This document shows, in pieces, positions 1-43,937 of a stretch of 64,000 bases of DNA. How positions within the stretch are numbered: position 1 is the first letter of the stretch; the number at the start of each line of letters is the position of its first letter. Location of the stretch: positions 1 through 64,000 of the IMG/VR virus record IMGVR_UViG_3300027573_000779. The stretch is one strand, 5' to 3'. Made by a program: the position numbers and the translations under genes. Under the pieces are notes generated by a model that searched no databases, had not been told where the DNA came from, and saw only the letters and a list, made by a program, of their open reading frames with translations.

Positions 1-137
1 TACCTTCCCCGAATAGAACTACCTTATAGAGCGAGCCAATAAAGCCGATATAAGGGTGAATGGTAGGAGAATTTAAGCGATAACCATTCGAAATAGCACA
101 CTATCAAAAGCTGAATGACAGCCTGGAAAGACAGGCA
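1..137 (+). ncRNA. 3' end of a large structured ncRNA truncated by the window edge (ROOL-like by recalled resemblance)
   Basis: Non-coding stretch with stacked hairpins CCTTATA/TATAAGG, GAATGGT/ACCATTC and GCCTG-GAAAGA-CAGGC, followed by T/A runs. The family name is from memory and needs an Rfam check. Confidence 0.4.
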
Positions 138-178
138 TCTTTTAAACTTTTTAAAAAAAAAAAAAAGACGGTCAAATT

Positions 179-2848
179 TTATCTACTATTGTATGTAAGC
201 ATCGCTGGTGAAGAGTTTAACGTTTGATACTTGCTCCAAATTGTAATTGTATATTGCGTCTTTCTTGTAATTAAGTCAACATAACTGTATGAAGTACTAT
301 TAGCCGCTAGTGTCGCGTCTACTTCAAGAGTGGTTTTCCCTTTCACTTTAGAAACAATCCTCAAACGATAACCCTCCTCCCCTGTGGAATTGTCTGTCCA
401 ATTTATGAGCAAACCATTTCCAGTTCTTACTACTCTAAGGTTGGTCGGAGGATTTAATATAACCGTTGGCGCGTTAGTAACAGTTATTGTTGCGTCTAAA
501 CTAATCTTTACGCCACAGTTATTAGTAACTATAGCCTTGTAAACTCCCGCGTTAGTGCTATTAGCCGTGAAAGTATAGTCATCATCGCCTTGAGCAACTA
601 ACACATTATCTTTATACCATTCATAGGCTAACGGTGCGGTTCCAGTTGCACGAACGCTTAAAGTATTAGTAGTCCCAATCAACATTGTTGCAGATTGTGG
701 CTGCACCGTAATAACTGGCGCGTCACAAGGCGGAGGCGGAGGCGGAGGTTCTGAACCATCAAACACCGTGACATAAAACCACCCCTTAACATTGAAATAT
801 TTACCTTTAAAAGTTACATTGAATTCATAGGTGCCGGGATTAGTATAAGTAAAACTGCCATAAGGCACTGAAATAGACTTTAATAAACCTGTATCCAATG
901 GGTCGATAAATATCATTACCGGACCATAAGGTTCTACGCTCCCTGAAAAATCATAATTTAAAGTAAAAGGAGCAAACCCGGACTGTTGGTCTATCTTTAT
1001 ATCGATGTTCGGAGCAACCGTTGTAGAGTTTGTTTCGGCACCAAATCTGATATATTTATAGTCAGAATAAAATATCTCTTTTAAAGGAGTCTCAACTATA
1101 TGGTAACCAACAACACTTCTGTTAGTCTGTGTATTAAGATATCCGAGAGTATTGCGAGAACAATTAGTAATACTCTCAAACGTAAAATATGTCACACTTG
1201 CCACTCCTCCCAACACACCAATTATATGACTTACCCATAACTGTTGAGGAGCGCCTTCTGTAAGACAAAGCCCTATACGGGGTAACATTAACAGTGGGTT
1301 GGGGTCGGGAATAACAATAGTCTCCATTGTGAAAACACTGGGAGAAATCTCAGATTTGAAAATATTTATTCCTATTTTCTTTTGTGTAGCTCCTCCCTTG
1401 CCATCTAAAGCTGTAACTGTCACTCGGGCGACGAAATCTATAACATATTTTGGAGCAATAAAAGAAACAGAATTTAAAGTCGTTTGGAAAAAGTTATCAA
1501 TAGATGATATAACAACTCTAACAGGGTCTCCATTAGGGTCAGTTGCCGTAGCACTAATAGAAACGTTTTCTCCTGCCATTACATTTTGAGTAAATTGCAC
1601 GTTCAAAACAGGCGGATTATTCGGTTGCGGATTAAGTATAAACGGATTAATTAATGCCTTTCTAACATTAATTTTACCACCGGTTTGACTCTGTGTAGCT
1701 GGAGGGTCAGTTAAAATATCATAACTATCAGGATGTAAAATAGCATCCCGTAGTTGAGTCGCCGTTAGATTAGGATTAACTGACAAAATTAAAGCTGCAA
1801 GCCCCGCAACGTGAGGAGTAGCCATTGAAGTACCATTTAAAATTCTATATCCGTTAGTGTTTCCCAAGGACACACTATTGGTTGGCACGGTGCTTAAAAT
1901 ACCAACACCGGGGGCAGCAATATCTACATTAGCATAACCATAGTTTGAAAAGGACGCTTTTTTATTATTAATGTCAGTTGCCATAACAGTAATAACACTG
2001 TTATTTGTAGCTTCCGCTGGTGAGTAATTATTAACATCAATATTAGCAGAAGAATTTCCCGCAGCAACAATAGAAGTAACACCAGCGTCTTCTAATCTTT
2101 TAAATGCCTCAGACGTGGCACTATCTATAGCTGAACCACCGCCCCAAGAATTACTGGTCAACCGAAAATTAATTCCGCGAGTTTTCTTAAGTTCAATTAT
2201 CTTATCGTAAAGTAATATCGCGTCGCTTCGACTACCAGAACCACTTGAACCAAGAAATTTAAATCCAGCAATCTTTACCTTCCAATTAACTCCTACTACA
2301 CCAATTCCGTTGTCTCCAACCGCACCTATAGTTCCAGCGCAGTGCGTTCCATGTCCATGGTCATCAATAACTCCCTCAGTTAAAACTCCTAGCCTAGCTG
2401 TCCACCCGTGAGCACCCGTTATTGGGTCGGTCCAAACGTTTGCAACCAAATCAGGATGTTCTGTCCAAAGCCCAGTGTCTACTACAGCCACAATAATATC
2501 TTCTCCTCCTGTGCTAATATCCCAACCTAAAGGAGCTTCAATATTTGGCATCCCCCAAAGTTCGGAATAACGAGGGTCATTAGGGATTGCATCTAAAGTT
2601 ATTTCTTGGTCTGGCTCCAAGAATTCAAACTTGTCAGTTGCTAAAAGTCTTTCAATAACATCGGGATTATTAAACTCAAACCTATGAATATCAACATATT
2701 GTAAATGTTGAGATTTTCCATTATTTCCTTTAACAAGACCTTCTATCTCGTCTTTATCCTTGTTGTTTTTTAATTTACCCAACCAAACTTCGCCATTTAG
2801 ATTGAGCGCTAAAAAGAGAACTAATATACAGTTAAATACTTTTCTCAT
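179..2848 (-). CDS. Secreted S8 subtilisin-like serine protease with C-terminal Ig/PKD-like, Pro-rich linker, Ig and FN3 domains
   Basis: Signal peptide; catalytic motifs VVDTG, HGHGTHCAG, NGTSMATPHVAG; oxyanion AAGN; C-terminal PPTNLRV...WTDNS FN3 pattern. Confidence 0.93.
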   Translation of the reverse strand: MRKVFNCILVLFLALNLNGEVWLGKLKNNKDKDEIEGLVKGNNGKSQHLQYVDIHRFEFNNPDVIERLLATDKFEFLEPDQEITLDAIPNDPRYSELWGMPNIEAPLGWDISTGGEDIIVAVVDTGLWTEHPDLVANVWTDPITGAHGWTARLGVLTEGVIDDHGHGTHCAGTIGAVGDNGIGVVGVNWKVKIAGFKFLGSSGSGSRSDAILLYDKIIELKKTRGINFRLTSNSWGGGSAIDSATSEAFKRLEDAGVTSIVAAGNSSANIDVNNYSPAEATNNSVITVMATDINNKKASFSNYGYANVDIAAPGVGILSTVPTNSVSLGNTNGYRILNGTSMATPHVAGLAALILSVNPNLTATQLRDAILHPDSYDILTDPPATQSQTGGKINVRKALINPFILNPQPNNPPVLNVQFTQNVMAGENVSISATATDPNGDPVRVVISSIDNFFQTTLNSVSFIAPKYVIDFVARVTVTALDGKGGATQKKIGINIFKSEISPSVFTMETIVIPDPNPLLMLPRIGLCLTEGAPQQLWVSHIIGVLGGVASVTYFTFESITNCSRNTLGYLNTQTNRSVVGYHIVETPLKEIFYSDYKYIRFGAETNSTTVAPNIDIKIDQQSGFAPFTLNYDFSGSVEPYGPVMIFIDPLDTGLLKSISVPYGSFTYTNPGTYEFNVTFKGKYFNVKGWFYVTVFDGSEPPPPPPPCDAPVITVQPQSATMLIGTTNTLSVRATGTAPLAYEWYKDNVLVAQGDDDYTFTANSTNAGVYKAIVTNNCGVKISLDATITVTNAPTVILNPPTNLRVVRTGNGLLINWTDNSTGEEGYRLRIVSKVKGKTTLEVDATLAANSTSYSYVDLITRKTQYTITIWSKYQTLNSSPAMLTYNSR

Positions 2849-2878
2849 ACAAAGGCAATTACACCTAAGTATGAGAAA
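2841..2878 (-). promoter_or_regulatory. 10-bp perfect hairpin sequestering the protease start codon, with a GTGTAA motif in the loop
   Basis: TTTCTCATAC (2841-2850) and GTATGAGAAA (2869-2878) are a perfect inverted repeat; the stem contains ATG AGA AA; the 18-nt loop carries GTGTAA on the minus strand. Confidence 0.6.
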
Positions 2879-2904
2879 GAGTGTAAAGTTTATTTACAGA
2901 AAAT

Positions 2905-2981
2905 TGGTACTCCCGTTGGGACTTGCACCCAAATTTGTCTACTTAGAAGGTAGATGCCTCATCTATTTCGGCCACAGGAGC
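2905..2981 (-). tRNA. tRNA-Arg(UCU) with non-canonical elbow (A18, G55)
   Basis: GCTCCTG/CGGGAGT acceptor, TCTAC-CTTCTAA-GTAGA anticodon arm, TTGGG-TGCAAGT-CCCAA T arm, encoded CCA, A20. Confidence 0.92.
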
Positions 2982-3003
2982 ATTTTACTGAGGTTGGCAG
3001 TCT

Positions 3004-3951
3004 TTACTCTGATAAAGCACTAATAGTGTGTAAGCCCCTACGATTCGCGAACAAAGACCAATTCATGCCATCGGAAGAGGTTAGTACTTGTAGTGGTGCG
3101 CCCCCTGCGGCCCCATTGCGCCACCATAAAAGATTATTTACCGCACTACTACCCAATGGTTCTCCTCGTAACACAAGCCAATGTGTGCCGACTGGACACG
3201 CAACATTTGGCATAGGGAAAACTGTCTTACTCACAATAGCATTCGATAAACTAAACGTGTCCATATGAGGCATACTTGAGATAGCTACAGCAACAGATTC
3301 ACCAAGCTGAGTAACGGGATTAGTGCCGCCTAACCAAATAGACGCGTAAACCTGTCCCTGTAGACCGCCTACACTTTGAAGCGCCGCTGTGAGTTCACAT
3401 ATAGCGGTGTTGTTAGTCCACACAAAGGGCGTTGCAGCATACTTCCTTGAAGATACATCAAGCCATCGAGTATAACCAAAACCACTATTTGTTGACATGT
3501 TCATTAATACTTCATCACATGTGACTACTGGGGGAGGAGGATTTGTGACGGGTGGAAGGTCATTTGTGTAAATAATAGTGATAGTATCTGTATACTTGGT
3601 GACGCGAAGGTTGGGAGGTTCTTCGGGAAGATTCGGTGGAGGAGGAGGAAGAGGCGTATTATAAACGACTTCGTTACTGAAATCACTCTCCATATTTTCA
3701 TTATTGGCAGCAGTAGCAGTAAAGTAGTAGGTGCGACCAGCAAGAAGGCCGTCAATTGAACCTAAAAGGACATTTCCAACATTAAGTTTGTTGGTATAAA
3801 ACCCGCTAGTGCCACCGGAATATAAATAATACGAAACTACATTCGTGTCAGGGCTAGGGTCCCACGCCAAAGTAACGGTCCCCGCATAGACAGAGAGGTT
3901 AATGAGAACAAGAATTACGATTGTTTTGATGCCGAGTTTGATTTTTTTCAT
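3004..3951 (-). CDS. Secreted FN3-domain protein with Pro-rich linkers and an unknown C-terminal beta domain
   Basis: Signal peptide, VTLAWDPS...YYFTATA...ESDFSNEV FN3 pattern, PPPPPP linker. Confidence 0.8.
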   Translation of the reverse strand: MKKIKLGIKTIVILVLINLSVYAGTVTLAWDPSPDTNVVSYYLYSGGTSGFYTNKLNVGNVLLGSIDGLLAGRTYYFTATAANNENMESDFSNEVVYNTPLPPPPPNLPEEPPNLRVTKYTDTITIIYTNDLPPVTNPPPPVVTCDEVLMNMSTNSGFGYTRWLDVSSRKYAATPFVWTNNTAICELTAALQSVGGLQGQVYASIWLGGTNPVTQLGESVAVAISSMPHMDTFSLSNAIVSKTVFPMPNVACPVGTHWLVLRGEPLGSSAVNNLLWWRNGAAGGAPLQVLTSSDGMNWSLFANRRGLHTISALSE

Positions 3952-4018
3952 TTTTTTAGGTGTGTTAGTGTCTCATTTTGAGGCACAAGTGGAAAAAAAG
4001 ATTTTCATTTCTATCAGT

Positions 4019-4024
4019 TTACAC
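4019..4024 (-). promoter_or_regulatory. GTGTAA motif (putative phage late promoter) upstream of the FN3 gene
   Basis: GTGTAAACTGATAG on minus strand; the same hexamer recurs in intergenic positions at 2859, 19382, 35485, 43847 and 45005. Confidence 0.4.
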
Positions 4025-4054
4025 GAACCTTGGGTTGAATACAAGGAAAAAAGA

Positions 4055-4128
4055 TGGTGGGGCCGCTCGGTAACTCTCCGAGTTCAAAAATTTAAAAGAT
4101 TTTTGCTTCAATTTAAAGCTTCGACCCC
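4055..4128 (-). tRNA. tRNA-Lys(UUU) with fully rewired elbow (A18, U19, A54, G55, A56, U58)
   Basis: GGGGTCG/CGGCCCC acceptor, AAAAT-CTTTTAA-ATTTT anticodon arm, CTCGG-AGAGTTA-CCGAG T arm, ACCA end. Confidence 0.9.
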
Positions 4129-4132
4129 ATAA

Positions 4133-4384
4133 CTAAGTTTTTTTTATTAACCAACCAGTGTTAATAGTGTTGCTTTGAAAGCCGTTCTGCCATTTTACTG
4201 TTGCATATTCTCCATAGAGATAATGGTTGTTTTCTAATCGTAAACCTAATATTTCACCTGTTAGGTTTTTTTGGTGGATTTCTTGGTATTGTTCTTTATT
4301 AATCTGACAGCCATCATATAACTTATGCGCACCCTTGGGTTCTAACTGAACCGTATCTCCTACTTGAAGTCCTGATTTATCCAT
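4133..4384 (-). CDS. Hypothetical protein
   Basis: 83-aa ORF in gene-dense minus-strand array. Confidence 0.6.
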   Translation of the reverse strand: MDKSGLQVGDTVQLEPKGAHKLYDGCQINKEQYQEIHQKNLTGEILGLRLENNHYLYGEYATVKWQNGFQSNTINTGWLIKKT

Positions 4385-4618
4385 GATTTTATTTTGTAAG
4401 CGTAAATTTTAAAAAATTTATTAAAATCAATGGTTCCTCTAGGTTAGATACTCTGTTTAAAAATCTACTTGGCTCTAAGGTTAGTTGGAGGTAACGGTAT
4501 ACTGGGTATGCGAACAGTGGCATACGGACTCTTGCCTTGTAAACGTTATACTCAGCTTCCATTCGTCACTCTTTAAATGATGGGGTTCTAGCCCAACATC
4601 TTTAATAGTTTGAAATTC

Positions 4619-5722
4619 TTAATTCTTCAAAACCTGATACAATAATTTCTTTCTATCTTCTGAATCTAAACCCTTACCGTCCAACAGTTTAAACACAAAA
4701 GAAGCGCGATTTGTATTTCCGTATGCTTTAATAACTTCAAGCGCCTGTTCTTTTCGAGTTGGTAAATGCGCCAAACGACTGGTCACAAAAGTATTCATGC
4801 CTTGAATAATCTTTGCAACCTCTTTTGAACCGTCACAAATCCGCGATGCATCCCCTCTACATTGATTCCATAGCTCCCAATCAAATTGAGAAGTAATATT
4901 AGCTTCAAAGGTTCGATATTCAGGTTCACCTTGCGCAAACCACACATCCACAACTTTATCGAAAGAAGACAAAGCTTCCTTCATTCTGTGCAAGCTCAAA
5001 TACCACAAGGACTTACATTTATGGATTGCTTGACCGTCTTTAGAATAAACACAAACGCCCTCTTTGCCTTTCCATGTCTCGACATCAGTCATTAAAGCTT
5101 CAACTGAAGAAAATTGATAAGTAGAAGGTCGCTTAAATTCTAATGCTTTCGCAACTTCATCGAGTCTTTCCTGAGACCATAAAGTATAATCTAAATGTTC
5201 AACAACTCCAACCAAAATCCAATCGGGCTGTTCACCATAATTTAGAATGATTTTACGAGTAGGGGACACCCATTCAAAGAGCCAAGACTTTTTGCCCCAA
5301 TCTTTAATTGAATTATAAATCAAGTCAATTTTGTATAAAAGGGCTTGTTTAAAAACTTCAATCTCGTGCGCATTTTCTAAATCTTCAACATTTGAAGTGC
5401 CCCGAGTCCGAATGATATGTTTGCCTTTATACTTGGAAACAATCAACAGTGAGCCGTCTACTTTCTCAACGATAGTGGTCTTGTTAAGAGATTTTGGCAC
5501 TGGAAAGTGTTCTAGATTCTCGCCCCAATTCACAAATTTAGGAAAACCTGCCGAAACTAATTCTCCATCGTTATTCCAAAGGCTAGACCGCAATATCTTG
5601 TTATCTTGAGTCCACTTACATCCAATATGTTGGGGTTGGATTAACCACAATTGTTCCCCATCCAAAACATGCTGGTGAATCATGAATTGGGCGCGGTCAA
5701 TTAAATCTAAGTCAATTTTCAA
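4619..5722 (-). CDS. T4 Rnl1-like RNA ligase (nucleotidyltransferase)
   Basis: Motif I EKVDGSL, RTRG, LFEW, EGVCV, KCKS. Confidence 0.82.
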   Translation of the reverse strand: MKIDLDLIDRAQFMIHQHVLDGEQLWLIQPQHIGCKWTQDNKILRSSLWNNDGELVSAGFPKFVNWGENLEHFPVPKSLNKTTIVEKVDGSLLIVSKYKGKHIIRTRGTSNVEDLENAHEIEVFKQALLYKIDLIYNSIKDWGKKSWLFEWVSPTRKIILNYGEQPDWILVGVVEHLDYTLWSQERLDEVAKALEFKRPSTYQFSSVEALMTDVETWKGKEGVCVYSKDGQAIHKCKSLWYLSLHRMKEALSSFDKVVDVWFAQGEPEYRTFEANITSQFDWELWNQCRGDASRICDGSKEVAKIIQGMNTFVTSRLAHLPTRKEQALEVIKAYGNTNRASFVFKLLDGKGLDSEDRKKLLYQVLKN

Positions 5723-5732
5723 TCTGGTTGCT

Positions 5733-5760
5733 ATTATAGCAAGACTTTTTAGAATGTCAA
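5733..5760 (-). promoter_or_regulatory. Sigma70-type promoter TTGACA-N16-TATAAT (extended -10)
   Basis: TTGACAttctaaaaagtcttgcTATAAT upstream of the RNA ligase. Confidence 0.7.
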
Positions 5761-5937
5761 ACGATTGGTCTCCAAAACACTTTTAAAATAGTTTGTTTTT
5801 ACCCCAAGCACCCATTCTTTGTAGTGTTTTTCTATCTCAGGAATTTCCTTAGGGGGACGTTGGGGCCAGCGAGCTTCAAAAGATGGATTTTGAACAAACA
5901 AAAAGGAAATTAACAATCCGGCACCTAAAAAATTCAT
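5749..5937 (-). CDS. Small hypothetical protein with N-terminal hydrophobic segment
   Basis: ORF track; abuts neighbours. Confidence 0.5.
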   Translation of the reverse strand: MNFLGAGLLISFLFVQNPSFEARWPQRPPKEIPEIEKHYKEWVLGVKTNYFKSVLETNRLTF

Positions 5938-6149
5938 AAACAGTCTGATTTAAGATAACCGGCCTCTTCTAGTCTGAGTTTAAGAAAATAAGGCAAACTT
6001 AGACTAAGATACCCATCTTCTTGCATATTATGCCACTCTAAAAGTATTTCATTAATTTTTCTTGTGATTGCGTCCCACGTTTGAGGGTTTTCCATAACTT
6101 TAGTTACACTAAATTCTCCCCTCAATCTCCACGCGGAGCGAGGGGTCAC
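5934..6149 (-). CDS. Hypothetical protein
   Basis: ORF track; 4-nt overlap with next gene. Confidence 0.5.
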   Translation of the reverse strand: MTPRSAWRLRGEFSVTKVMENPQTWDAITRKINEILLEWHNMQEDGYLSLSLPYFLKLRLEEAGYLKSDCL

Positions 6150-6271
6150 GCCACCCGTTCAATTAGAATACATTGACTTTTGGACAAGAACAGATGTCGT
6201 AAATTGGAGACAGAGCCTACAGCTAAGTAGGCAAAACATCTCATGAGAACGTCTCTTCTCTGTCAATGATA

Positions 6272-6742
6272 CTAACTACCTACTCTCTCATTCGTCCCAT
6301 CCCAAACAAACTCTCCATCTTCGCCGACAAGTAGATGTTTGCCACACCCACAACAATAAGTCAGTCCATAGAACTTTGGATTTCTACTATAAGTTTCGGC
6401 TATGGCTTGACCCATATAAGTTATCGCCCCACAGCCTTTGCCTATTTTATTTAACTCTTCCTGTGTCCAGAACTTACCTAGGGCGGCAGTATTCGGCGGA
6501 TACTCCTCATACTTAGCATAACCAAACTCATCATATAACTCATGCTCCTTAGCAGTAAGGTCGCGTAAGGGATACTTCGGGCCAGCGATGCCTACGTGTT
6601 TGTAGCTCGTCCTGACTGGTCGCACGAACCCTTTAGCCTTCTCTTCTTCAGAGAGTACTAAATATACCTCGCACGGAGGAACGGATTGTTTATCTTCTCC
6701 ACCGCGACAAATGCGCGGGTCATTAGGGTCTGTAGTTAGCAT
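6272..6742 (-). CDS. Conserved-type phage hypothetical protein with Cys cluster (putative Zn-binding)
   Basis: HVG...CG...TYCCGCGKHL Cys motifs. Confidence 0.65.
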   Translation of the reverse strand: MLTTDPNDPRICRGGEDKQSVPPCEVYLVLSEEEKAKGFVRPVRTSYKHVGIAGPKYPLRDLTAKEHELYDEFGYAKYEEYPPNTAALGKFWTQEELNKIGKGCGAITYMGQAIAETYSRNPKFYGLTYCCGCGKHLLVGEDGEFVWDGTNERVGS

Positions 6743-19413: not shown

Positions 19414-19911
19414 TTACAATTCTTTGCCATCCAACCCCACAAGAGTTGAAACCCTCTTCCAACCATACGTTTTCATCTGTTCTTCATTCATGGTGTCAAG
19501 GCTGGCTTCGGGACTAATCACAAAAATGGAAATATTCTTCTCTCGTATGGTTTTTAGATATTTTTTGACAATAATTTCAAGAGAATAAGCTGATTGTTGA
19601 GCGTATTGAGGGTCGATTCTAAGAACGACCAAGCTGTTAGGTTCAATCTCATCTATCTTGATTATCTTATCTAACTTTAGACCAATTTCAACGTCTGTCT
19701 CTTGTTTAAGCCAACGAATAAATTTATCTTGAACATCCTGTGAGACCCCTTGCCCCTTCATTAATTCTTCGACAGAAGCATATCTTCTCCCGGTAGGTTT
19801 AATTTCTTCTGGATTTTTTAAAGGATGATTATCGTTCAGAGGATTTTCACATCCTACATCGTCATCTTCTGTTGTTCGGCCCATATAAATTCTTTCTTTA
19901 TTATGCTGCAA
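19414..19911 (-). CDS. Hypothetical protein
   Basis: ORF track; follows the PurA-like gene. Confidence 0.6.
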   Translation of the reverse strand: MQHNKERIYMGRTTEDDDVGCENPLNDNHPLKNPEEIKPTGRRYASVEELMKGQGVSQDVQDKFIRWLKQETDVEIGLKLDKIIKIDEIEPNSLVVLRIDPQYAQQSAYSLEIIVKKYLKTIREKNISIFVISPEASLDTMNEEQMKTYGWKRVSTLVGLDGKEL

Positions 19912-21241
19912 CCATCTCTTTTTTCAAGTTTAAAAAAGACATCTTATCGTTTGCCATTTCCCCATAAGATTTAATACCTATAGGGACATTTAACATATCA
20001 GTAAGAATATTAGGAATTGCTTCCCCTTCTACTTTTTCCGATTCACAATTAACTTTACCGAGAGTTTTACCTAGTTCTTCCTGATTAACTAAAAATGACA
20101 TATGGGGTTTTTTAAGTTCCCAAAGTTTTCCATTTAAATTATAGCCAGTGTTAATATACCATGGATTGATTTCATTAATTCTATCACAATGAGAAACCGC
20201 CAAATAATCTACCCCACCGTTAACTTCTAGGGCATATTTTAAAAGGGGAATATCTAACATGCCCGTTCTAAATCTTCCTTGCCATGGACCAGTTGTATTA
20301 GCTGTGTCTTGTAAATTCCAAGGCATTTCAGTTGGAAAAGGTCCTGCGCCGTGTCTGGTGGCATAAATTCTAGTTACACCAATCTCAACAATGTTAGATT
20401 CTAATAACCCCAAGCCAGCTTCATTTAAAACCTTATATACGTTTTCTGTGGTTGTATTACTCCAAGTTGTGTGGGGGTGAAAACCCCATTTTTCATCTAG
20501 TAATATGCCTTGAGCGCCCTCAAAAACAGGATTATTGGAACCTTTTAGCAATTCTGAAACCTGTTGAGCGTCTATGATGTTAATTTTTTTGCTTAATTCC
20601 TGATATTCTTTAGCTATACGGTCAGTAAAACGCAAATCTCTGAAAAACTTAGCATGAGAACCTATAAAATTATAGAAATCAACCCCTTCCCTGTCTAGGC
20701 GCGAAATCATCGCCCTAAAGGTAAGCCAAAGCTTTTCATGGGTAATATCATAATTCTTAAGGTCTTTAACCCGTAAAACATTATCTCTCTTTAAACTGTC
20801 TAAAACTGTTTCTCCAATCCCCACTCCACACGAGCCATGACGATTATTGTTTCTACTCTCTTCTAACATCCTGTTAGCCGCAACATGAAATGGGGTAGTA
20901 ACCAAAGCTCGTTCATCTACATAAATTGATTCAAAGTTTCCCCCTTTGCGCCAAGTATTTGCACTTAAAACCTCTTCTTCTTTTATTAAGGATAAGGGGT
21001 TAAATAAAACGTGCTTAGTGAGTAATGTTTTAACGTTCCGATTGACTAAAGTTCCACTGCCAAACTGAGCAAAAACGTGAGAGTCGCCACTTGAAGTAAC
21101 AACTCTGTGGGCACATTGAGCGCCGCCATTATATCTGATAACTAAATCAGAATTGTTTTGACGGACAAGAAAGTCAACAACACTTCCTTTTGTTTCGTCG
21201 CCGTGTTGCAGACCCACAACTATGAAAACATTTTTGTCCAT
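19901..21241 (-). CDS. Divergent adenylosuccinate synthetase-like protein (start revised to MDKNV)
   Basis: GDETKG, RYNGGAQCAH, FEGAQGILLD, TRHGAGPFPTE, GRFRTG. Confidence 0.9.
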   Translation of the reverse strand: MDKNVFIVVGLQHGDETKGSVVDFLVRQNNSDLVIRYNGGAQCAHRVVTSSGDSHVFAQFGSGTLVNRNVKTLLTKHVLFNPLSLIKEEEVLSANTWRKGGNFESIYVDERALVTTPFHVAANRMLEESRNNNRHGSCGVGIGETVLDSLKRDNVLRVKDLKNYDITHEKLWLTFRAMISRLDREGVDFYNFIGSHAKFFRDLRFTDRIAKEYQELSKKINIIDAQQVSELLKGSNNPVFEGAQGILLDEKWGFHPHTTWSNTTTENVYKVLNEAGLGLLESNIVEIGVTRIYATRHGAGPFPTEMPWNLQDTANTTGPWQGRFRTGMLDIPLLKYALEVNGGVDYLAVSHCDRINEINPWYINTGYNLNGKLWELKKPHMSFLVNQEELGKTLGKVNCESEKVEGEAIPNILTDMLNVPIGIKSYGEMANDKMSFLNLKKEMVAA

Positions 21242-21310
21242 AAATTTGAAAAAAAGGGAGAGGAAAGGCAACCATAACCATTCCTCTCCCGGTGTGCGAA
21301 CCCGAACCAA

Positions 21311-40572: not shown

Positions 40573-43500
40573 ATGACAAAAACTTTAACTCAGGACGCTA
40601 CCTCTATTAATTTTGAACAGGAAATTTCAAACTATATTTTTGTTAGTCGTTACAGTAGATTTAATGAAAAGTTAGGGAGAAGAGAAACATGGGATGAGGC
40701 AGTTAGTAGGTTGGAAACCATGCACTTAAAGAAATTTAATTATCTTTCAAAGGAGGATAAGGATGAAATTAAGTGGGCGTTTGATATGGTTAGAGCAAAA
40801 CGGGTCGTTCCTTCGATGCGAAGTTTACAGTTCGGAGGCAAAGCAATTGAAGCTCATCAAGCTAGAATTTTCAACTGTAGTGTTCGGCATGTAGATTCTA
40901 TTCGTTCTTTTGCTGAGATAATGTATCTTTTGCTTTGTGGATGCGGGGTAGGTATTGGAGTAAGCAGGTTTTTTCTTCGTCGCTTGCCTGATTTGGTAGA
41001 TGCTAAAGATAAAACTGGAACAGTTGTCACTTATAGTATTGAGGATAGTATGGAGGGGTGGGCTGATTCAGTTGAAGCTCTTTTGATGTGTTATTTTAAG
41101 AATACTCCCTATACAGGTAGGAAGATTTGTTTTGATTATTCTAAAATTAGAAAAAAAGGAACGCCTCTTAAGACTGGAGGAGGTAAAGCTCCGGGTTACA
41201 AAGGCTTAAAAAACACTCATCTGAAAATTAAAGCTCTTCTTGACCATATTATTGAAAATAAAAAACAACTTCGACTTAAATCTATTGATGCTTATGATAT
41301 TTTAATGCATTGTGCCGACGCCGTTCTTTCAGGGGGAATTAGACGCTCAGCTACTTCGGTTATTTTTGATGAAGACGACGAAGATATGATGAATGCTAAA
41401 ACCTCATTTAAAGTAACTAAAAAAAGTGGGTTTGAAGAAGATGGGACCTCTGTTGTTGGTGGAAAGACCTATCAGTTATACAACGGCAAAGTTACTGTTG
41501 ATGGCCTAACCTATTATGTCACTTTGAAAGAATATGAATACGAACAGCTTAAGAAAAGCGGAACAATTAGCTGGATGCATATTCAACCCCAAAGAGCAAG
41601 GTCTAACAATAGCATTTTACTTCTAAGGGATAAAATAACGTATGAGAAGTTCAATGAGATGGTACAAAGAACCCGTCAATGGGGAGAACCGGGATTTGTA
41701 TTTGCTAATCATCCTTGGACCCTACTGAACCCCTGTTTTGAGATAGGGTTTATTCCTATTACCGACGATGGAGTTTGCGGCACCCAGTTTTGTAACCTCA
41801 CTTCTATCAACGGGAAAAAGATTACCTCTTTTCAAGACTTTAAAGAATGTGGCAAGGCAGCTTCATTAATAGGAACACTCCAAGCGGCTTATACTTACTT
41901 CTCTTATCTTTCACAAGCAGCACAGGAAGTAAGCGAGCAAGAAAGTTTATTGGGCGTAAGCCTAACAGGATGGATGGATTCTCCGTCCGTTCTCTTAAAT
42001 GAGGAAAATCAAAGAAAGGTAAGTTCTCTCGTGGTAGAAACAAACAGGATTTGGGCTAAGAAAATTGGCGTAAATCAGGCAGCAAGAACAACATGCGTAA
42101 AACCCGAGGGTTGCGTTTCAGCCGATACTTTAATTTTATCTAATGAAGGTATTTTATATTTAGATGAGGTTGGGGATATTAATGGTAAAGAATGGCAAAA
42201 TCATCAAATAAATATTAGTTCTGCGTTAGATATTAAAGCATCAGATAAATTTTTTGTTAATGGACGCAAAAACGTATTAAAAATTAAATTTAACAGTGGA
42301 TTTGAATTTACTGGAACCCTCAATCATAAAGTTCAAGTTGTCAATAGTCACGGAATAGAATGGAAACAGCTTGATAATTTACAAAAAGGGGATGCTGTTG
42401 TTTACAGAATTGGTGGATACGATAGTGCTTTTGGGTCTTATCAAAAGCTCAAGAAGCCCTCATTTGTATTACATAAAAACTCTCATAACACACAAGAAAT
42501 AATATGCCCCCCTATCTTAGACGAAGAACTTGCTTGGTTCCTCGGTCTTTATTTAGGAGACGGTTCGAATCACGAGAAAGGGATACGTATTTCAGGCAAC
42601 CGAAAAGATGTGTCAGATTTAGATAAAGCGAATAAGATAGTTAATAAATATTTTGGCATATCTTTTACTACTAGTAATTATCAAAAAGATGAATTAGATA
42701 ATAGAATTCAATATTATTTCAATTCAATACAATTGCTTAAGTTTTTGGAAGAGAATGGCCTTTTGAAACCTAAATCTCAAGACATTGAAATCCCTAAGAT
42801 TGTTCGTCAGTCTCCTAAATCTGTAATTGAATTTTATTTAGATGGGTATGCAGCAGCAGATGGATGTGATGAGAGTCGAACTAGGAGTTACCATACTGTT
42901 TCTGAGAAGATGGCAAAGCAACTACCAATAGTTTTAAGAGCTATAGGAAAAGATTGTAAAGTTCGCAAATATAAGCCTTCCAAAGGGTCGTTCGGCACAA
43001 ATGAAAAATATTGGATACAAGAACGAAAGAGCTTAAATGGTAATATAAACAGGAATAGCCGTTTAGATAAAAAAATATACAATATATTAAAGGCAAGCGG
43101 CTACAGTAGCCATTTATATGATGTGGTTGACAATGTTGTTTATGGGGCGAATGAGCCAACCTATGATATTTCGGTTCCAGACGAACATGCCTATATTGCT
43201 AATAGCTTTGTTTCCCACAACACATCATCTTTAGTCCTAGGCACTGCCTCAGGCATTCACCCACATCATTCTAGAAGATATTTCAGAAGAGTTCAATGTA
43301 ACACAGAAGACAATGTGTATAGACACTTTAAAAAGACCAATCCCAAACTTTGTGAGCCTTCAGTATGGTCCGCCAATAAAACAGACGATGTAATTACTTT
43401 TCCAGTCACGGTTTCTGATGAAGCAATGGTTAAAAGTGACCTTTCTGCTATTGAACATTTGGAAATTATCAAATCTGTTCAAAAAAATTGGGTAATTAAC

Positions 43501-43827
43501 GGAACAACCGAAGCAAACAAGAAGGATTTGACTCATAATGTCTCATGCACCGTTATCGTTAAAGATGACGAGTGGGACAAGGTAATCGATTATCTTTATC
43601 TAAACAGAGAGTATTTTGCTGCCGTTTCTCTTTTGCCAGAAACTGGAGATAAAGACTTTCCTCAAGCTCCAATGGAGGCCGTTATAACTCCAGAAGATGA
43701 AGAACATTGGGAGGAAATTATTAGTAATTTTAAGTCCGTAGATTATACCAAACTTAAAGAAGAAGAAGATAATACTGCCCTTTCCCAAGAAGGCTCTTGT
43801 TATGGTGGAGCCTGTCAAATAATATAG
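40573..43827 (+). CDS. nrdJ: Class II (B12-dependent) ribonucleotide reductase containing an intein
   Basis: RSLQFGG, FNCS, NPCFEI, FCNL, TTCVKPEG|T, C-terminal CYGGAC. Confidence 0.9.
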   Translation: MTKTLTQDATSINFEQEISNYIFVSRYSRFNEKLGRRETWDEAVSRLETMHLKKFNYLSKEDKDEIKWAFDMVRAKRVVPSMRSLQFGGKAIEAHQARIFNCSVRHVDSIRSFAEIMYLLLCGCGVGIGVSRFFLRRLPDLVDAKDKTGTVVTYSIEDSMEGWADSVEALLMCYFKNTPYTGRKICFDYSKIRKKGTPLKTGGGKAPGYKGLKNTHLKIKALLDHIIENKKQLRLKSIDAYDILMHCADAVLSGGIRRSATSVIFDEDDEDMMNAKTSFKVTKKSGFEEDGTSVVGGKTYQLYNGKVTVDGLTYYVTLKEYEYEQLKKSGTISWMHIQPQRARSNNSILLLRDKITYEKFNEMVQRTRQWGEPGFVFANHPWTLLNPCFEIGFIPITDDGVCGTQFCNLTSINGKKITSFQDFKECGKAASLIGTLQAAYTYFSYLSQAAQEVSEQESLLGVSLTGWMDSPSVLLNEENQRKVSSLVVETNRIWAKKIGVNQAARTTCVKPEGCVSADTLILSNEGILYLDEVGDINGKEWQNHQINISSALDIKASDKFFVNGRKNVLKIKFNSGFEFTGTLNHKVQVVNSHGIEWKQLDNLQKGDAVVYRIGGYDSAFGSYQKLKKPSFVLHKNSHNTQEIICPPILDEELAWFLGLYLGDGSNHEKGIRISGNRKDVSDLDKANKIVNKYFGISFTTSNYQKDELDNRIQYYFNSIQLLKFLEENGLLKPKSQDIEIPKIVRQSPKSVIEFYLDGYAAADGCDESRTRSYHTVSEKMAKQLPIVLRAIGKDCKVRKYKPSKGSFGTNEKYWIQERKSLNGNINRNSRLDKKIYNILKASGYSSHLYDVVDNVVYGANEPTYDISVPDEHAYIANSFVSHNTSSLVLGTASGIHPHHSRRYFRRVQCNTEDNVYRHFKKTNPKLCEPSVWSANKTDDVITFPVTVSDEAMVKSDLSAIEHLEIIKSVQKNWVINGTTEANKKDLTHNVSCTVIVKDDEWDKVIDYLYLNREYFAAVSLLPETGDKDFPQAPMEAVITPEDEEHWEEIISNFKSVDYTKLKEEEDNTALSQEGSCYGGACQII
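42112..43221 (+). mobile_element. 370-aa intein with LAGLIDADG homing endonuclease
   Basis: Starts CVSADT after KPEG, ends VSHN before Thr; LAWFLGLYLGDGS and FYLDGYAAADG. Confidence 0.95.
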
Positions 43828-43846
43828 GTCTTTTTTAGGCTCTTTT

Positions 43847-43852
43847 GTGTAA
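43847..43852 (+). promoter_or_regulatory. GTGTAA motif (putative late promoter)
   Basis: GTGTAAATACATAAG intergenic, upstream of the membrane gene pair. Confidence 0.4.
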
Positions 43853-43937
43853 ATACATAAGAGCCATGTTAACTATAGAAAGACTTTAATTTTAAAGCTA
43901 TCGTGCAACTTTCGAGGTTGGCGGTAGCTTATTTTTT

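What the first reader, a model, noticed from the sequence alone, without database searches (positions are those of the whole stretch)
2841..2878. Start-codon-sequestering hairpin with a putative late promoter in its loop
Seen: a perfect 10-bp stem hides the protease ATG and the loop contains GTGTAA. Known: T4 late genes such as e and soc are silenced on read-through transcripts by hairpins that late-promoter transcripts cannot form. Inference: the same temporal switch keeps the protease off until late infection.
Basis: partly seen in the sequence, partly recalled or inferred. Interest (0 to 1): 0.6.

Follow-up and report, generated by a model that had tools for sequence, protein, structure and literature searches.

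The report
Promoter-in-hairpin switch on phage protease
A strong RNA hairpin hides the start codon of a secreted protease gene in an uncultivated 209-kb phage, and a phage-specific promoter motif sits in its loop. This is the same timing trick known from phage T4, rebuilt here with a different promoter and apparently leaderless messages.

Summary
On the minus strand, TTTCTCATAC (2878-2869) pairs perfectly with GTATGAGAAA (2850-2841), which holds the ATG (2848-2846) of an 889-aa secreted S8 subtilase. The 18-nt loop holds GTGTAA (2864-2859) plus a 5-bp inner helix. The hairpin folds at -18 kcal/mol (z about -7).

A 10-bp palindrome alone is not rare here (15 in the genome, about 6 expected). 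The context carries the case.
- GTGTAA is the most enriched hexamer upstream of genes in this genome. It marks the tail-gene block and both sides of divergent intergenic regions.
- A start codon lies exactly 8 nt after GTGTAA in 11 of 79 copies. This mirrors the leaderless sigma70-type early promoters.
- The only two perfect hairpins of 10 bp or more that span a start codon belong to the two S8 paralogs. Their arms lie in different, non-homologous positions.
- Three more GTGTAA sites lying behind early-type or sigma70-like promoters carry significant hairpins whose 5' arm lies upstream of the predicted start.

No start site or expression timing could be measured. The promoter is not the T4 type, and "late" may mean middle plus late. 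I class it as a new variant of a known kind, of moderate interest.

The parts
2869..2878 (-). 5' arm of the hairpin (TTTCTCATAC). It lies upstream of the predicted start of the GTGTAA-driven transcript, so it is present only in read-through RNA.
   Evidence: Sequence; folds.
2851..2868 (-). 18-nt loop. It contains GTGTAA and a 5-bp inner helix, AGGUG (2866-2862) with UGCCU (2857-2853), which includes two G.U pairs. AGGUG is the only Shine-Dalgarno-like string, 13 nt before the AUG, and it is paired.
   Evidence: The sense strand folds 3 kcal/mol better than the antisense strand.
2859..2864 (-). GTGTAA, the core of a phage-specific, -10-like promoter motif with no -35 element.
   Evidence: It is the most enriched hexamer upstream of genes: 25 genes against 3.7 expected. 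In sense-oriented upstream intergenic DNA it occurs 26 times against a shuffle mean of 7.3 and a maximum of 20. It is present in both orientations in the divergent regions at 82.05-82.11 kb and 143.61-143.70 kb. A start codon lies exactly at +14 in 11 of 79 copies, against 146 of 12,493 for all NNNTAA hexamers.
2841..2850 (-). 3' arm (GTATGAGAAA) holding the protease ATG (2848-2846). The predicted start of the GTGTAA transcript is at about 2852-2850.
   Evidence: start-codon pairing probability 1.0; rank 4 of 322 by MFE. RNA beginning at 2852 has an unpaired AUG, with MFE -5.1 and z +0.2. The start position is inferred from the motif-to-ATG spacing.
179..2848 (-). The regulated gene: an 889-aa secreted S8 subtilase with a signal-peptide-like N-terminus, an Ig domain and a possible FN3-like C-terminus.
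   Evidence: The FN3-like label is my reading of the C-terminal sequence and of fn3 hits in homologues; Pfam gave no fn3 hit on this protein. A paralog with 52% identity lies at genome 149694..151790(+).
2905..2981 (-). tRNA-Arg(UCU), 26 nt upstream on the same strand. It forms part of the presumed read-through early transcript.
5733..5760 (-). The nearest upstream early promoter (TTGACA-16-TATAAT, 12 of 12 matches plus TG). It is the presumed source of read-through RNA across the RNA-ligase gene, small ORFs, the 315-aa ORF and the tRNA into the protease gene.
   Evidence: No minus-strand terminator-like site lies in the intergenic DNA between 5733 and 2878.
2881..2886 (+). A second GTGTAA on the opposite strand, just outside the hairpin. 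It forms a TTACAC-N16-GTGTAA inverted pair. Its role is unknown: possibly an antisense start, possibly chance.
   Evidence: Similar inverted pairs occur at 82058-82088 and 115204-115221.

Best explanation
The hairpin is an RNA switch that ties translation of the protease to promoter choice.

The genome is a 209-kb phage genome. Early genes are driven by host-type TTGACA-N17-TATAAT promoters, mostly as leaderless messages. A second class of genes, including the tail module, is preceded by a single -10-like element, GTGTAA. This element is probably read with the phage's own ECF-like sigma factor.

The protease gene sits at the end of an early, minus-strand transcription unit. RNA that reads through from upstream contains both arms. 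It folds at -18 kcal/mol and buries the AUG, together with the only SD-like AGGUG, so the protease is not made.

RNA started from the GTGTAA in the loop begins about 8 nt after the motif, at 2852-2850. It lacks the 5' arm and presents the AUG 2-4 nt from its 5' end. That form is translatable in this phage, whose early genes already rely on leaderless messages.

- Shown: the hairpin, its energy and position, the motif statistics, the early promoters, and the recurrence of the architecture.
- Inferred: that GTGTAA is a promoter, where transcription starts, that read-through RNA exists, and that the class is expressed after the early class.
For: 1. Structure. The stem is 10 perfect bp plus 5 inner bp, -17.7 to -18.6 kcal/mol, z -6.5 to -7.0. 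The start codon is paired with probability 1.0. The fold ranks 4th of 322 start regions, and the three above it are short ORFs with GTG or TTG starts, or lying alone on the opposite strand, that are probably miscalls.

2. The truncated RNA from 2852 has no structure over the AUG.

3. GTGTAA is promoter-like.
- It is the top enriched upstream hexamer.
- It is under-represented genome-wide but concentrated before genes of the 69-147 kb block. That block holds a minor tail protein and a lambda-J-like fibre.
- It often follows a terminator directly, and it occurs in both orientations in two divergent intergenic regions where promoters must exist.
- It has no -35 element and always a purine at +14.
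- Its TAA is a real upstream stop codon in only 4 sites.

4. Spacing. Early promoters place the ATG 6-9 nt after the -10 hexamer in 17 of 29 cases, which implies leaderless messages. GTGTAA places a start codon exactly 8 nt after itself in 11 of 79 copies, against 1.2% for other NNNTAA hexamers.

5. Recurrence with non-homologous arms.
- The S8 paralog (149694..151790) has a perfect 10-bp hairpin, GTAATAGCTT/AAGCTATTAC, with the ATG in its loop and its 5' arm overlapping GTGTAAT.
- Gene 198360..198590 has a 14-bp hairpin (-17.0, z -5.2) with GTGT in the 5' arm and the ATG in the 3' arm.
- The sites at 145475(-) and 43847(+) have GTGTAA in a hairpin loop (z -3.4 and -3.1). The site at 203644(-) has a weaker 7-bp version.
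- A local fold z of -3 or lower occurs in 5 of 8 embedded sites against 1 of 15 structural-block sites. My post hoc Fisher test gives p of about 0.009.

6. RNA level rather than DNA level.
- The arm sequences differ at every site, so there is no shared operator.
- G.U pairs make the sense strand more stable than the antisense strand by 3.1 kcal/mol (this site) and 6.5 kcal/mol (the 198-kb gene).

7. Read-through is plausible. A 12/12 early promoter sits at 5760(-), and there is no terminator-like site in the intervening intergenic DNA.

8. A sigma-70-family ORF is present: 233 aa at 142461..143162(-). It scores PF04542 over the cut-off and TIGR02937 at E 2e-10.

9. T4 precedent for the logic: PMC2988022 section 12.
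Against: - There are no transcript data. No RNA run holds this phage.
- There is no covariation. All environmental copies are identical over both protease hairpins. The nearest protease homologues (36-59% identity) sit in other contexts without this arrangement.
- The flanks of this GTGTAA copy are GC-richer than, and score poorly against, the structural-block copies: rank 68 of 79.
- One GTGTAA gene in an early block (202028..202237) has no hairpin, and several intergenic GTGTAA copies in the window have no clear ORF behind them.
- GTGTAA also precedes an ORF next to the DNA polymerase gene, so "late" is not established.
- A 10-bp perfect palindrome has roughly a one-in-three prior of being chance in this genome.
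- The classification of sites as embedded or structural was made after seeing the data.
- The host is unknown, so its ability to translate leaderless messages is inferred only from the phage's own early genes.
Confidence: 0.55

Rival explanations
1. The hairpin is mainly a transcriptional or RNA-processing boundary. It acts as a terminator, pause site or RNase III-type site that ends or cuts the early tRNA-containing transcript before the protease gene. Silencing then works on the transcript rather than on the ribosome. The GTGTAA transcript escapes because it lacks the 5' arm.
For: The paralog's hairpin is scored terminator-like on both strands and is followed by TAGTTTTGTGTTTTTT. The 145475 hairpin is followed by TTTAATAT. 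The hairpin here begins only 26 nt after a tRNA gene. The 43847 hairpin flanks GTGTAA but covers no real start codon.
Against: The hairpin at 2841-2878 has no U-tract. Its tail is AGUAUUUA, and the scan did not flag it. The 198-kb hairpin has none either. In the two strongest cases the AUG itself is in the stem, which a boundary element would not need. The helix is 15 bp interrupted by a 2x2 internal loop, which is short for a canonical RNase III site (my own knowledge).
Confidence: 0.15
2. The palindrome is a chance or neutral feature. GTGTAA may or may not be a working promoter here, and the stem has no regulatory role.
For: Locally shuffled genomes give about 6 perfect 10-bp hairpins against 15 observed, so roughly a third are expected by chance. 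There is no covariation or orthologue support. The flank score of this GTGTAA copy is poor.
Against: The only two perfect stems of 10 bp or more over start codons are on the two S8 paralogs. The chance that a random pair of 322 genes is that pair is about 2e-5 (my calculation). Further independent GTGTAA-plus-hairpin cases exist. The energy z-score is -7. G.U pairs favour the sense strand.
Confidence: 0.12
3. The hairpin forms on all protease transcripts, because transcription starts upstream of it or GTGTAA is not a promoter. It then acts as a constitutive damper, or as a trans-activated element opened by a factor, by temperature or by translation of an upstream frame. Output of a potentially harmful secreted protease stays low rather than being timed.
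For: The start site is only inferred. In a distant relative (L027), GTGTAA lies 68 nt before the protease ATG and a 7-bp helix pairs the AUG within that leader. In the T4 genes listed for this kind of control, the RNA structure sequesters the ribosome-binding site (PMC2988022).
Against: The exact 8-nt motif-to-start spacing mode and the consistent placement of 5' arms upstream of +12 to +14 at five or six sites are hard to explain if transcripts start further upstream. The L027 helix is weak (z -1.9).
Confidence: 0.1
4. The inverted repeat acts in DNA, as an operator for a dimeric regulator or as a cruciform that controls the GTGTAA promoter lying between its arms.
For: The arms flank the motif symmetrically, and inverted TTACAC/GTGTAA pairs occur at three sites. 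In T4, I-TevI binds an operator that overlaps its late promoter (PMC2988022).
Against: The arm sequences are unrelated among the sites, and arm spacing and register vary. The centre-to-centre spacing of 28 bp is atypical for a dimeric operator (my own knowledge). G.U pairs in two hairpins would be A-C mismatches in the other strand of a DNA cruciform.
Confidence: 0.06

Closest known systems
Phage T4 (and Aeromonas phage Aeh1) genes whose ribosome-binding site is sequestered on early or middle read-through transcripts and freed on transcripts from an internal late promoter: I-TevI, I-TevII, I-TevIII, segB and mobE. RBS sequestration by RNA structure is also reported for soc, e, 39, 25 and 26 (PMC2988022, section 12).
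   Same: The gene is embedded in an earlier transcription unit. A very stable hairpin covers the initiation region. A promoter of a later class is placed so that its transcripts lack the 5' half of the hairpin. The expected result is that translation depends on which promoter made the RNA.
   Different: The promoter core is GTGTAA, not TATAAATA. The candidate factor is an ECF-like sigma, not gp55/gp33/clamp. There is no well-spaced Shine-Dalgarno. The short transcript would be leaderless or carry a 2-nt leader, so the switch runs between a buried internal AUG and a 5'-terminal AUG. The phage is an unrelated 209-kb genome with lambda-like tail genes. The targets are two secreted subtilases and small ORFs, not lysozyme, capsid decoration or homing endonucleases. 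Nothing has been tested experimentally.
Phage lambda cI expressed from PRM (leaderless mRNA) or from PRE (leadered mRNA). This comparison rests on my own knowledge, not on a tool result.
   Same: One gene has two promoters, one of which starts at the A of the AUG. The 5' end of the message therefore decides how it is translated.
   Different: In lambda the leadered form is the well-translated one, and no hairpin hides the AUG. Here the long form is predicted to be silent and the near-leaderless form active.
Intrinsic (rho-independent) terminators that insulate phage transcription units
   Same: Both are stable stem-loops at the junction between two units. The paralog's hairpin has a U-rich tail and matches a terminator pattern.
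   Different: The hairpin at 2841-2878 has no U-tract and is not flagged. It contains the start codon and a promoter motif.
Single-element phage promoters that lack a -35 (T4 late TATAAATA; extended -10 promoters). This comparison rests on my own knowledge.
   Same: GTGTAA is a short -10-region element with no conserved -35. It sits about 8 nt before the inferred start.
   Different: The sequence fits neither TATAAATA nor TGnTATAAT, because there is no spacer base between TG and TA. The recognising factor is unknown.

Membership tests
T4-type promoter-in-hairpin translational switch | A stable RNA hairpin pairs the start codon or RBS in the longer transcript. | tested here: met
   10+5 bp, -17.7 to -18.6 kcal/mol, z -6.5 to -7.0. 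AUG pairing probability 1.0. Rank 4 of 322.
T4-type promoter-in-hairpin translational switch | The gene lies inside an earlier transcription unit, so longer read-through transcripts exist. | tested here: inconclusive
   It lies in a same-strand early block. A 12/12 sigma70-type promoter sits at 5760(-), and no terminator-like site lies in the intergenic DNA before 2878. This is a prediction only, because no RNA data exist.
T4-type promoter-in-hairpin translational switch | A promoter of a later class sits so that its start lies 3' of the hairpin's 5' arm. | tested here: inconclusive
   The motif is present in the loop and is statistically promoter-like. The spacing predicts a start at 2852-2850. 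The actual 5' end has not been measured, and the flank score is poor.
T4-type promoter-in-hairpin translational switch | The short transcript leaves the initiation region open. | tested here: met
   RNA from 2852 to 2800 has MFE -5.1, z +0.2, and an unpaired AUG.
T4-type promoter-in-hairpin translational switch | Protein is made only at the later time. | not testable with these tools
   The phage is uncultivated and no expression data exist.
T4 late promoter / gp55 system | A TATAAATA -10 element upstream of late genes. | tested here: not met
   TATAAATA has 29 copies and is not among the enriched upstream words. The enriched word is GTGTAA.
T4 late promoter / gp55 system | A gp55-type sigma with gp33 and the sliding clamp. 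| not tested
   Only a generic sigma70 region 2 / ECF-superfamily ORF was found. No gp55, gp33 or gp45 search was run.
Intrinsic terminator | A G+C-containing stem followed at once by a U-tract. | tested here: not met
   The scan of 1-6500 did not flag 2841-2878. Its tail is AGUAUUUA. The paralog's hairpin does meet the pattern.
Leaderless mRNA | Transcription starts at or within a few nt of the A of the AUG. | not testable with these tools
   This is inferred from two spacings. The -10-to-ATG distance is 6-9 nt at 17 of 29 early promoters. The GTGTAA-N8-start spacing is the mode. Here the spacing is N10, which implies a leader of about 2 nt.
Curated cis-regulatory RNA families (Rfam 15) | A match to a covariance model. 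| tested here: not met
   Only the tRNA matched in 2600-3100 at E of 1 or lower.

The most novel reading that the evidence does not exclude
This phage lineage may run its whole programme on near-leaderless messages. Both the host-type early promoters and a new GTGTAA promoter class (read by a phage ECF-like sigma) would be set to start at the AUG. Hairpins whose 5' arm lies just upstream of the start would then be a general device. They would make any GTGTAA gene embedded in an early unit silent on read-through RNA, so that promoter choice alone decides translation without Shine-Dalgarno involvement. The two secreted subtilases would be the most tightly gated cargo.
Probability: 0.3. Interest if true: 0.7.

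Novelty: new variant of a known kind. Interest (0 to 1): 0.5.

Why it matters
If the model holds, the T4 trick of placing a promoter inside an inhibitory hairpin has arisen independently. It would exist in an unrelated, uncultivated jumbo phage that uses a different promoter and sigma factor and has no Shine-Dalgarno in the switch. That would suggest a general solution for placing later genes inside early operons.

The finding also yields three practical things:
- a candidate promoter consensus (GTGTAA, start about 8 nt downstream);
- a candidate sigma factor for a lineage that standard phage protein families barely annotate;
- evidence that leaderless initiation is the default in this phage-host pair.

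Finally, it marks the two secreted subtilases as products whose timing the phage seems to guard closely. This hints at a role around or after lysis, such as acting on envelope or matrix proteins.

Tried and rejected
- **Comparative support.**
  - Word-based protein search.
  - Contig look-ups for the seven nearest homologues.
  - Alignment-based locus search in viral contigs.
  - A degenerate DNA pattern for the promoter-ATGAG core.
  - These found only identical copies of this phage or distant proteases in other contexts, so no covariation test was possible.
- **Population variants.** Contigs from two other sediment metagenomes are identical over 2259-3445. Four further copies of the paralog locus are also identical.
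- **Expression.** No run on record as RNA holds the stretch.
- **Similarity to known phages.** There was no DNA match. The protease has only matches below 40% identity, mainly in Bacillus phages.
- **T7-like RNAP.** The Pfam search was silent, but its control was also silent, so this says nothing.
- **Stop-codon artefact.** I considered that the TAA of GTGTAA might simply be upstream stop codons. Rejected: only 4 sites fit that reading.
- **Ordinary extended -10 promoter.** Rejected on spacing (and reasoning).
- **Shared operator.** Rejected because the arm sequences differ at every site.
- **GACCAAG word.** The intergenic enrichment of this word turned out to be coding 12-nt repeats, not a regulatory motif.
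- **Function of structural-block proteins.** PHROG and Pfam annotation of most of them failed. The "late" label therefore rests on two tail-gene hits only.
- **Not run.** The costly representative protein search, structure prediction and complex prediction were not needed.
Full report
**What the window is.** The window is the first 64 kb of a single 208,933-bp virus record with 37% G+C. Near-identical copies occur in groundwater and freshwater-sediment metagenomes. No known phage resembles it at the DNA level. Most of its proteins escape PHROG and Pfam annotation. Recognisable genes include an RNA ligase, a PurZ-like adenylosuccinate synthetase, a ribonucleotide reductase, a DNA polymerase, a minor tail protein and a lambda-J-like tail fibre.

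**The observation.** It holds exactly, on the minus strand.
- 5' arm: 2878-2869, TTTCTCATAC.
- Loop: 2868-2851, 18 nt.
- 3' arm: 2850-2841, GTATGAGAAA.
- The ATG at 2848-2846 opens ORF 179..2848(-).
- The product is an 889-aa S8 subtilase (Pfam E 1e-48) with a signal-peptide-like N-terminus and an Ig domain. The N-terminus aligns with its paralog, so this is the real start.
- GTGTAA lies at 2864-2859. AGGUG (2866-2862) pairs with UGCCU (2857-2853) inside the loop.
- The 38-nt element folds at -17.7 kcal/mol, z -7.0.
- A tRNA-Arg(UCU) gene ends 26 nt upstream on the same strand.

**Is it more than chance?**
- A perfect 10-bp inverted repeat is only mildly unusual. The genome has 15, against 5.6 +/- 1.8 in locally shuffled genomes.
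- Position makes the case. Among 322 called genes this start region ranks 4th by folding energy, with the AUG fully paired. The three above it are short ORFs with GTG or TTG starts, or lying alone on the opposite strand, that are probably miscalls.
- Across the genome, only two perfect stems of 10 bp or more span a start codon. They are on the two S8 protease genes.

**GTGTAA as a promoter-like motif.**
- It is the most enriched hexamer in the 60 nt before genes: 25 genes against 3.7 expected.
- In sense-oriented upstream intergenic DNA it occurs 26 times. The shuffle mean is 7.3 and the maximum in 2000 shuffles is 20.
- Genome-wide it is scarcer than its base composition predicts: 79 copies against about 140 (and my calculation).
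- The gene-proximal copies concentrate in the 69-147 kb block that holds the tail genes. They often follow a terminator hairpin and T-run directly. They occur in both orientations in the divergent regions at 82.05-82.11 kb and 143.61-143.70 kb, where promoters must exist.
- No -35 element accompanies it. The position 14 nt from its first G is always a purine.
- Its TAA is a genuine upstream stop codon at only four sites.
- A divergent sigma-70-family ORF of 233 aa at 142461..143162(-) is a candidate reader. It has region 2 over the Pfam cut-off and matches the ECF superfamily at E 2e-10.

**Where would transcription start?**
- The genome has a clear early class, TTGACA-N16-18-TAnnnT. It fills the minus-strand block (154-209 kb plus 1-36 kb) and the plus block at 146.6-153 kb.
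- In 17 of 29 such promoters with an ORF behind them, the start codon lies 6-9 nt after the -10 hexamer. These messages are therefore leaderless.
- GTGTAA shows the same behaviour. A start codon that opens an ORF of 40 aa or more lies exactly 8 nt after the motif in 11 of 79 copies, against 146 of 12,493 for all NNNTAA words.
- This places the start about 8 nt after the motif. At the protease that is 2852-2850, at the loop/3'-arm junction, which gives a 2-4 nt leader.
- An RNA beginning at 2852 has no structure over the AUG.

**Read-through.** The nearest upstream early promoter is a perfect TTGACA-16-TATAAT with TG at 5760-5733(-). No minus-strand terminator-like site lies in the intergenic DNA between it and the hairpin. 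Early RNA should therefore cross the RNA-ligase gene, the small ORFs, the 315-aa ORF and the tRNA, and carry both arms.

**Recurrence, the strongest argument.**
- *Paralog.* The S8 paralog (698 aa, 52% identity, genome 149694..151790(+), in the plus early block) has GTGTAAT 14 nt before its ATG. It also has a perfect 10-bp hairpin, GTAATAGCTT/AAGCTATTAC, with the ATG in the 8-nt loop.
- *Different pairing.* The two upstream regions are homologous around the motif (GTGTAAT-GC-TTT). The paired segments lie in different positions, so the pairing was rebuilt rather than inherited.
- *The 198-kb gene.* An unrelated 76-aa gene (198360..198590(-)) has a 14-bp hairpin (-17.0 kcal/mol, z -5.2). GTGT lies in its 5' arm and the ATG in its 3' arm.
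- *Further sites.*
  - At 145475(-) the site lies behind the early promoter at 146661, and GTGTAA sits in a hairpin loop (z -3.4).
  - At 43847(+) the site follows the reductase gene, and GTGTAA also sits in a hairpin loop (z -3.1).
  - The site at 203644(-) has a weaker 7-bp version.
- *Geometry.* In every case the 5' arm lies upstream of the predicted start.
- *Contrast.* Among structural-block copies only 1 of 15 reaches z of -3 or lower, and that one is an upstream terminator. My post hoc Fisher test on 5/8 against 1/15 gives p of about 0.009.
- *RNA level.* Arm sequences differ at every site. G.U pairs make the sense strand more stable than the antisense strand by 3.1 kcal/mol here and 6.5 kcal/mol at the 198-kb gene. 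This points to RNA pairing, not a shared DNA operator.

**Weaknesses.**
- There are no RNA data.
- There is no sequence variation in any environmental copy.
- There are no orthologous loci. The nearest homologues (36-59% identity) lie in other contexts.
- The flanks of this GTGTAA copy score poorly against structural-block copies, rank 68 of 79. The hairpin arms constrain those flanks, and the flank model itself is weak.
- One GTGTAA gene in an early block has no hairpin (202028..202237). Several intergenic copies in the window have no convincing ORF behind them.
- GTGTAA also precedes a 66-aa ORF just before the DNA polymerase gene. The class may therefore be middle plus late.
- The paralog's hairpin has a U-rich tail and matches a terminator pattern on both strands. 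Termination of read-through may contribute at some sites. The hairpin at 2841-2878 has no such tail.

**Comparison with what is known.**
- The logic matches phage T4 and its relatives. For I-TevI, I-TevII, I-TevIII, segB and Aeh1 mobE, an RNA structure sequesters the ribosome-binding site on early or middle transcripts. A late promoter placed just upstream yields transcripts too short to form it. RBS sequestration by RNA structure is also reported for soc, e, 39, 25 and 26 (PMC2988022 section 12).
- The differences are the promoter word (GTGTAA, not TATAAATA, which is not enriched) and the likely factor (an ECF-like sigma).
- A further difference is that no well-spaced Shine-Dalgarno is present, so the short message is near-leaderless.
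- The phage lineage and the gated genes also differ from the T4 cases.
- It therefore works like the T4 switch but does not belong to the T4 late-promoter system.

**Verdict.** It is best described as a new variant of a known regulatory device, resting on consistent but purely computational, within-genome evidence. My confidence in the switch model is about 0.55. The rivals, in order, are a transcript boundary or terminator (0.15), chance (0.12), a constitutive or trans-opened damper (0.10) and a DNA operator (0.06).

Noticed in passing
genome-wide; in the window e.g. 24060(-), 34776(-), 36340(-): The early sigma70-type promoters (TTGACA-N16-18-TAnnnT) place the start codon 6-9 nt after the -10 hexamer in 17 of 29 cases. 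The first gene of most early operons would therefore be translated from a leaderless mRNA. This says something about the unknown host.
   Followed up: partly
window 43838-43865 (+): Just after the reductase gene, GTGTAA sits in the loop of a 7-bp hairpin (GGCTCTT/AAGAGCC, z -3.1). No real ORF start lies in the stem, only a 4-codon ATG frame. The hairpin-around-promoter design is therefore not always tied to a start codon.
   Followed up: partly
window 2859-2886; also L011:18058-18088 and L014:204-221: Inverted TTACAC...GTGTAA pairs with spacers of 16, 19 and 6 nt occur far more often than 79 copies in 418 kb would give by chance. One pair marks a truly divergent promoter region. The other two would point an antisense start into a tRNA or coding region.
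   Followed up: no
window 19901-21310 (-): A 469-aa adenylosuccinate-synthetase homologue matches the PHROG family that holds PurZ-type enzymes, E 9e-78. The phage DNA might carry 2-aminoadenine in place of adenine.
   Followed up: no
L017:14975-15306 (genome 181,975-182,306) and scattered over 166-195 kb, minus strand: Long runs of a 12-nt unit, GGGACCAAGTT(T/C), read in frame as W/R-D-Q-V tetrapeptide repeats. They recur in several small early-block ORFs.
   Followed up: no
L015:11461-12162 (-) (genome 142461..143162): A 233-aa divergent ECF-like sigma factor gene. The ORF just upstream of it carries its own GTGTAA site, which would allow positive autoregulation.
   Followed up: partly
L012:16191-17078 (+) (genome 98191..99078): A 295-aa ORF with an HNH region like that of IscB and a weak HTH sits inside the structural block. 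It follows a terminator and its own sigma70-type promoter, and looks like a mobile homing-endonuclease cassette.
   Followed up: no
L014:243-16649 (+) (genome 115243..131649): A single open frame of 5,468 codons is preceded by GTGTAA and a Shine-Dalgarno sequence.
   Followed up: no
window 40573-43827 (+): The ribonucleotide reductase ORF is 1,084 aa. The reductase matches are split, and unrelated matches fall at residues 513-612 and 823-885. This suggests an inserted element such as an intein.
   Followed up: no
L027:1366-1371 and 4153-4169: A 28% G+C contig carries a 36%-identical protease of the same domain order. It has GTGTAA at the end of the preceding gene and a GTGTAA-N8-ATG before the following gene. 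The motif and its spacing may therefore be shared by a wider phage group.
   Followed up: partly
window 2843-2845 and 2905-2981 (-): The second codon of the protease is AGA, and it lies in the 3' arm. The tRNA gene 26 nt upstream is tRNA-Arg(UCU), which reads AGA.
   Followed up: no
window 150-170 (-) and genome 208,906-208,930 (-): A run of about 14-16 T after CGTC follows the protease stop codon. A very similar CGTC-T run lies just upstream of the early promoter at the other end of the record.
   Followed up: no
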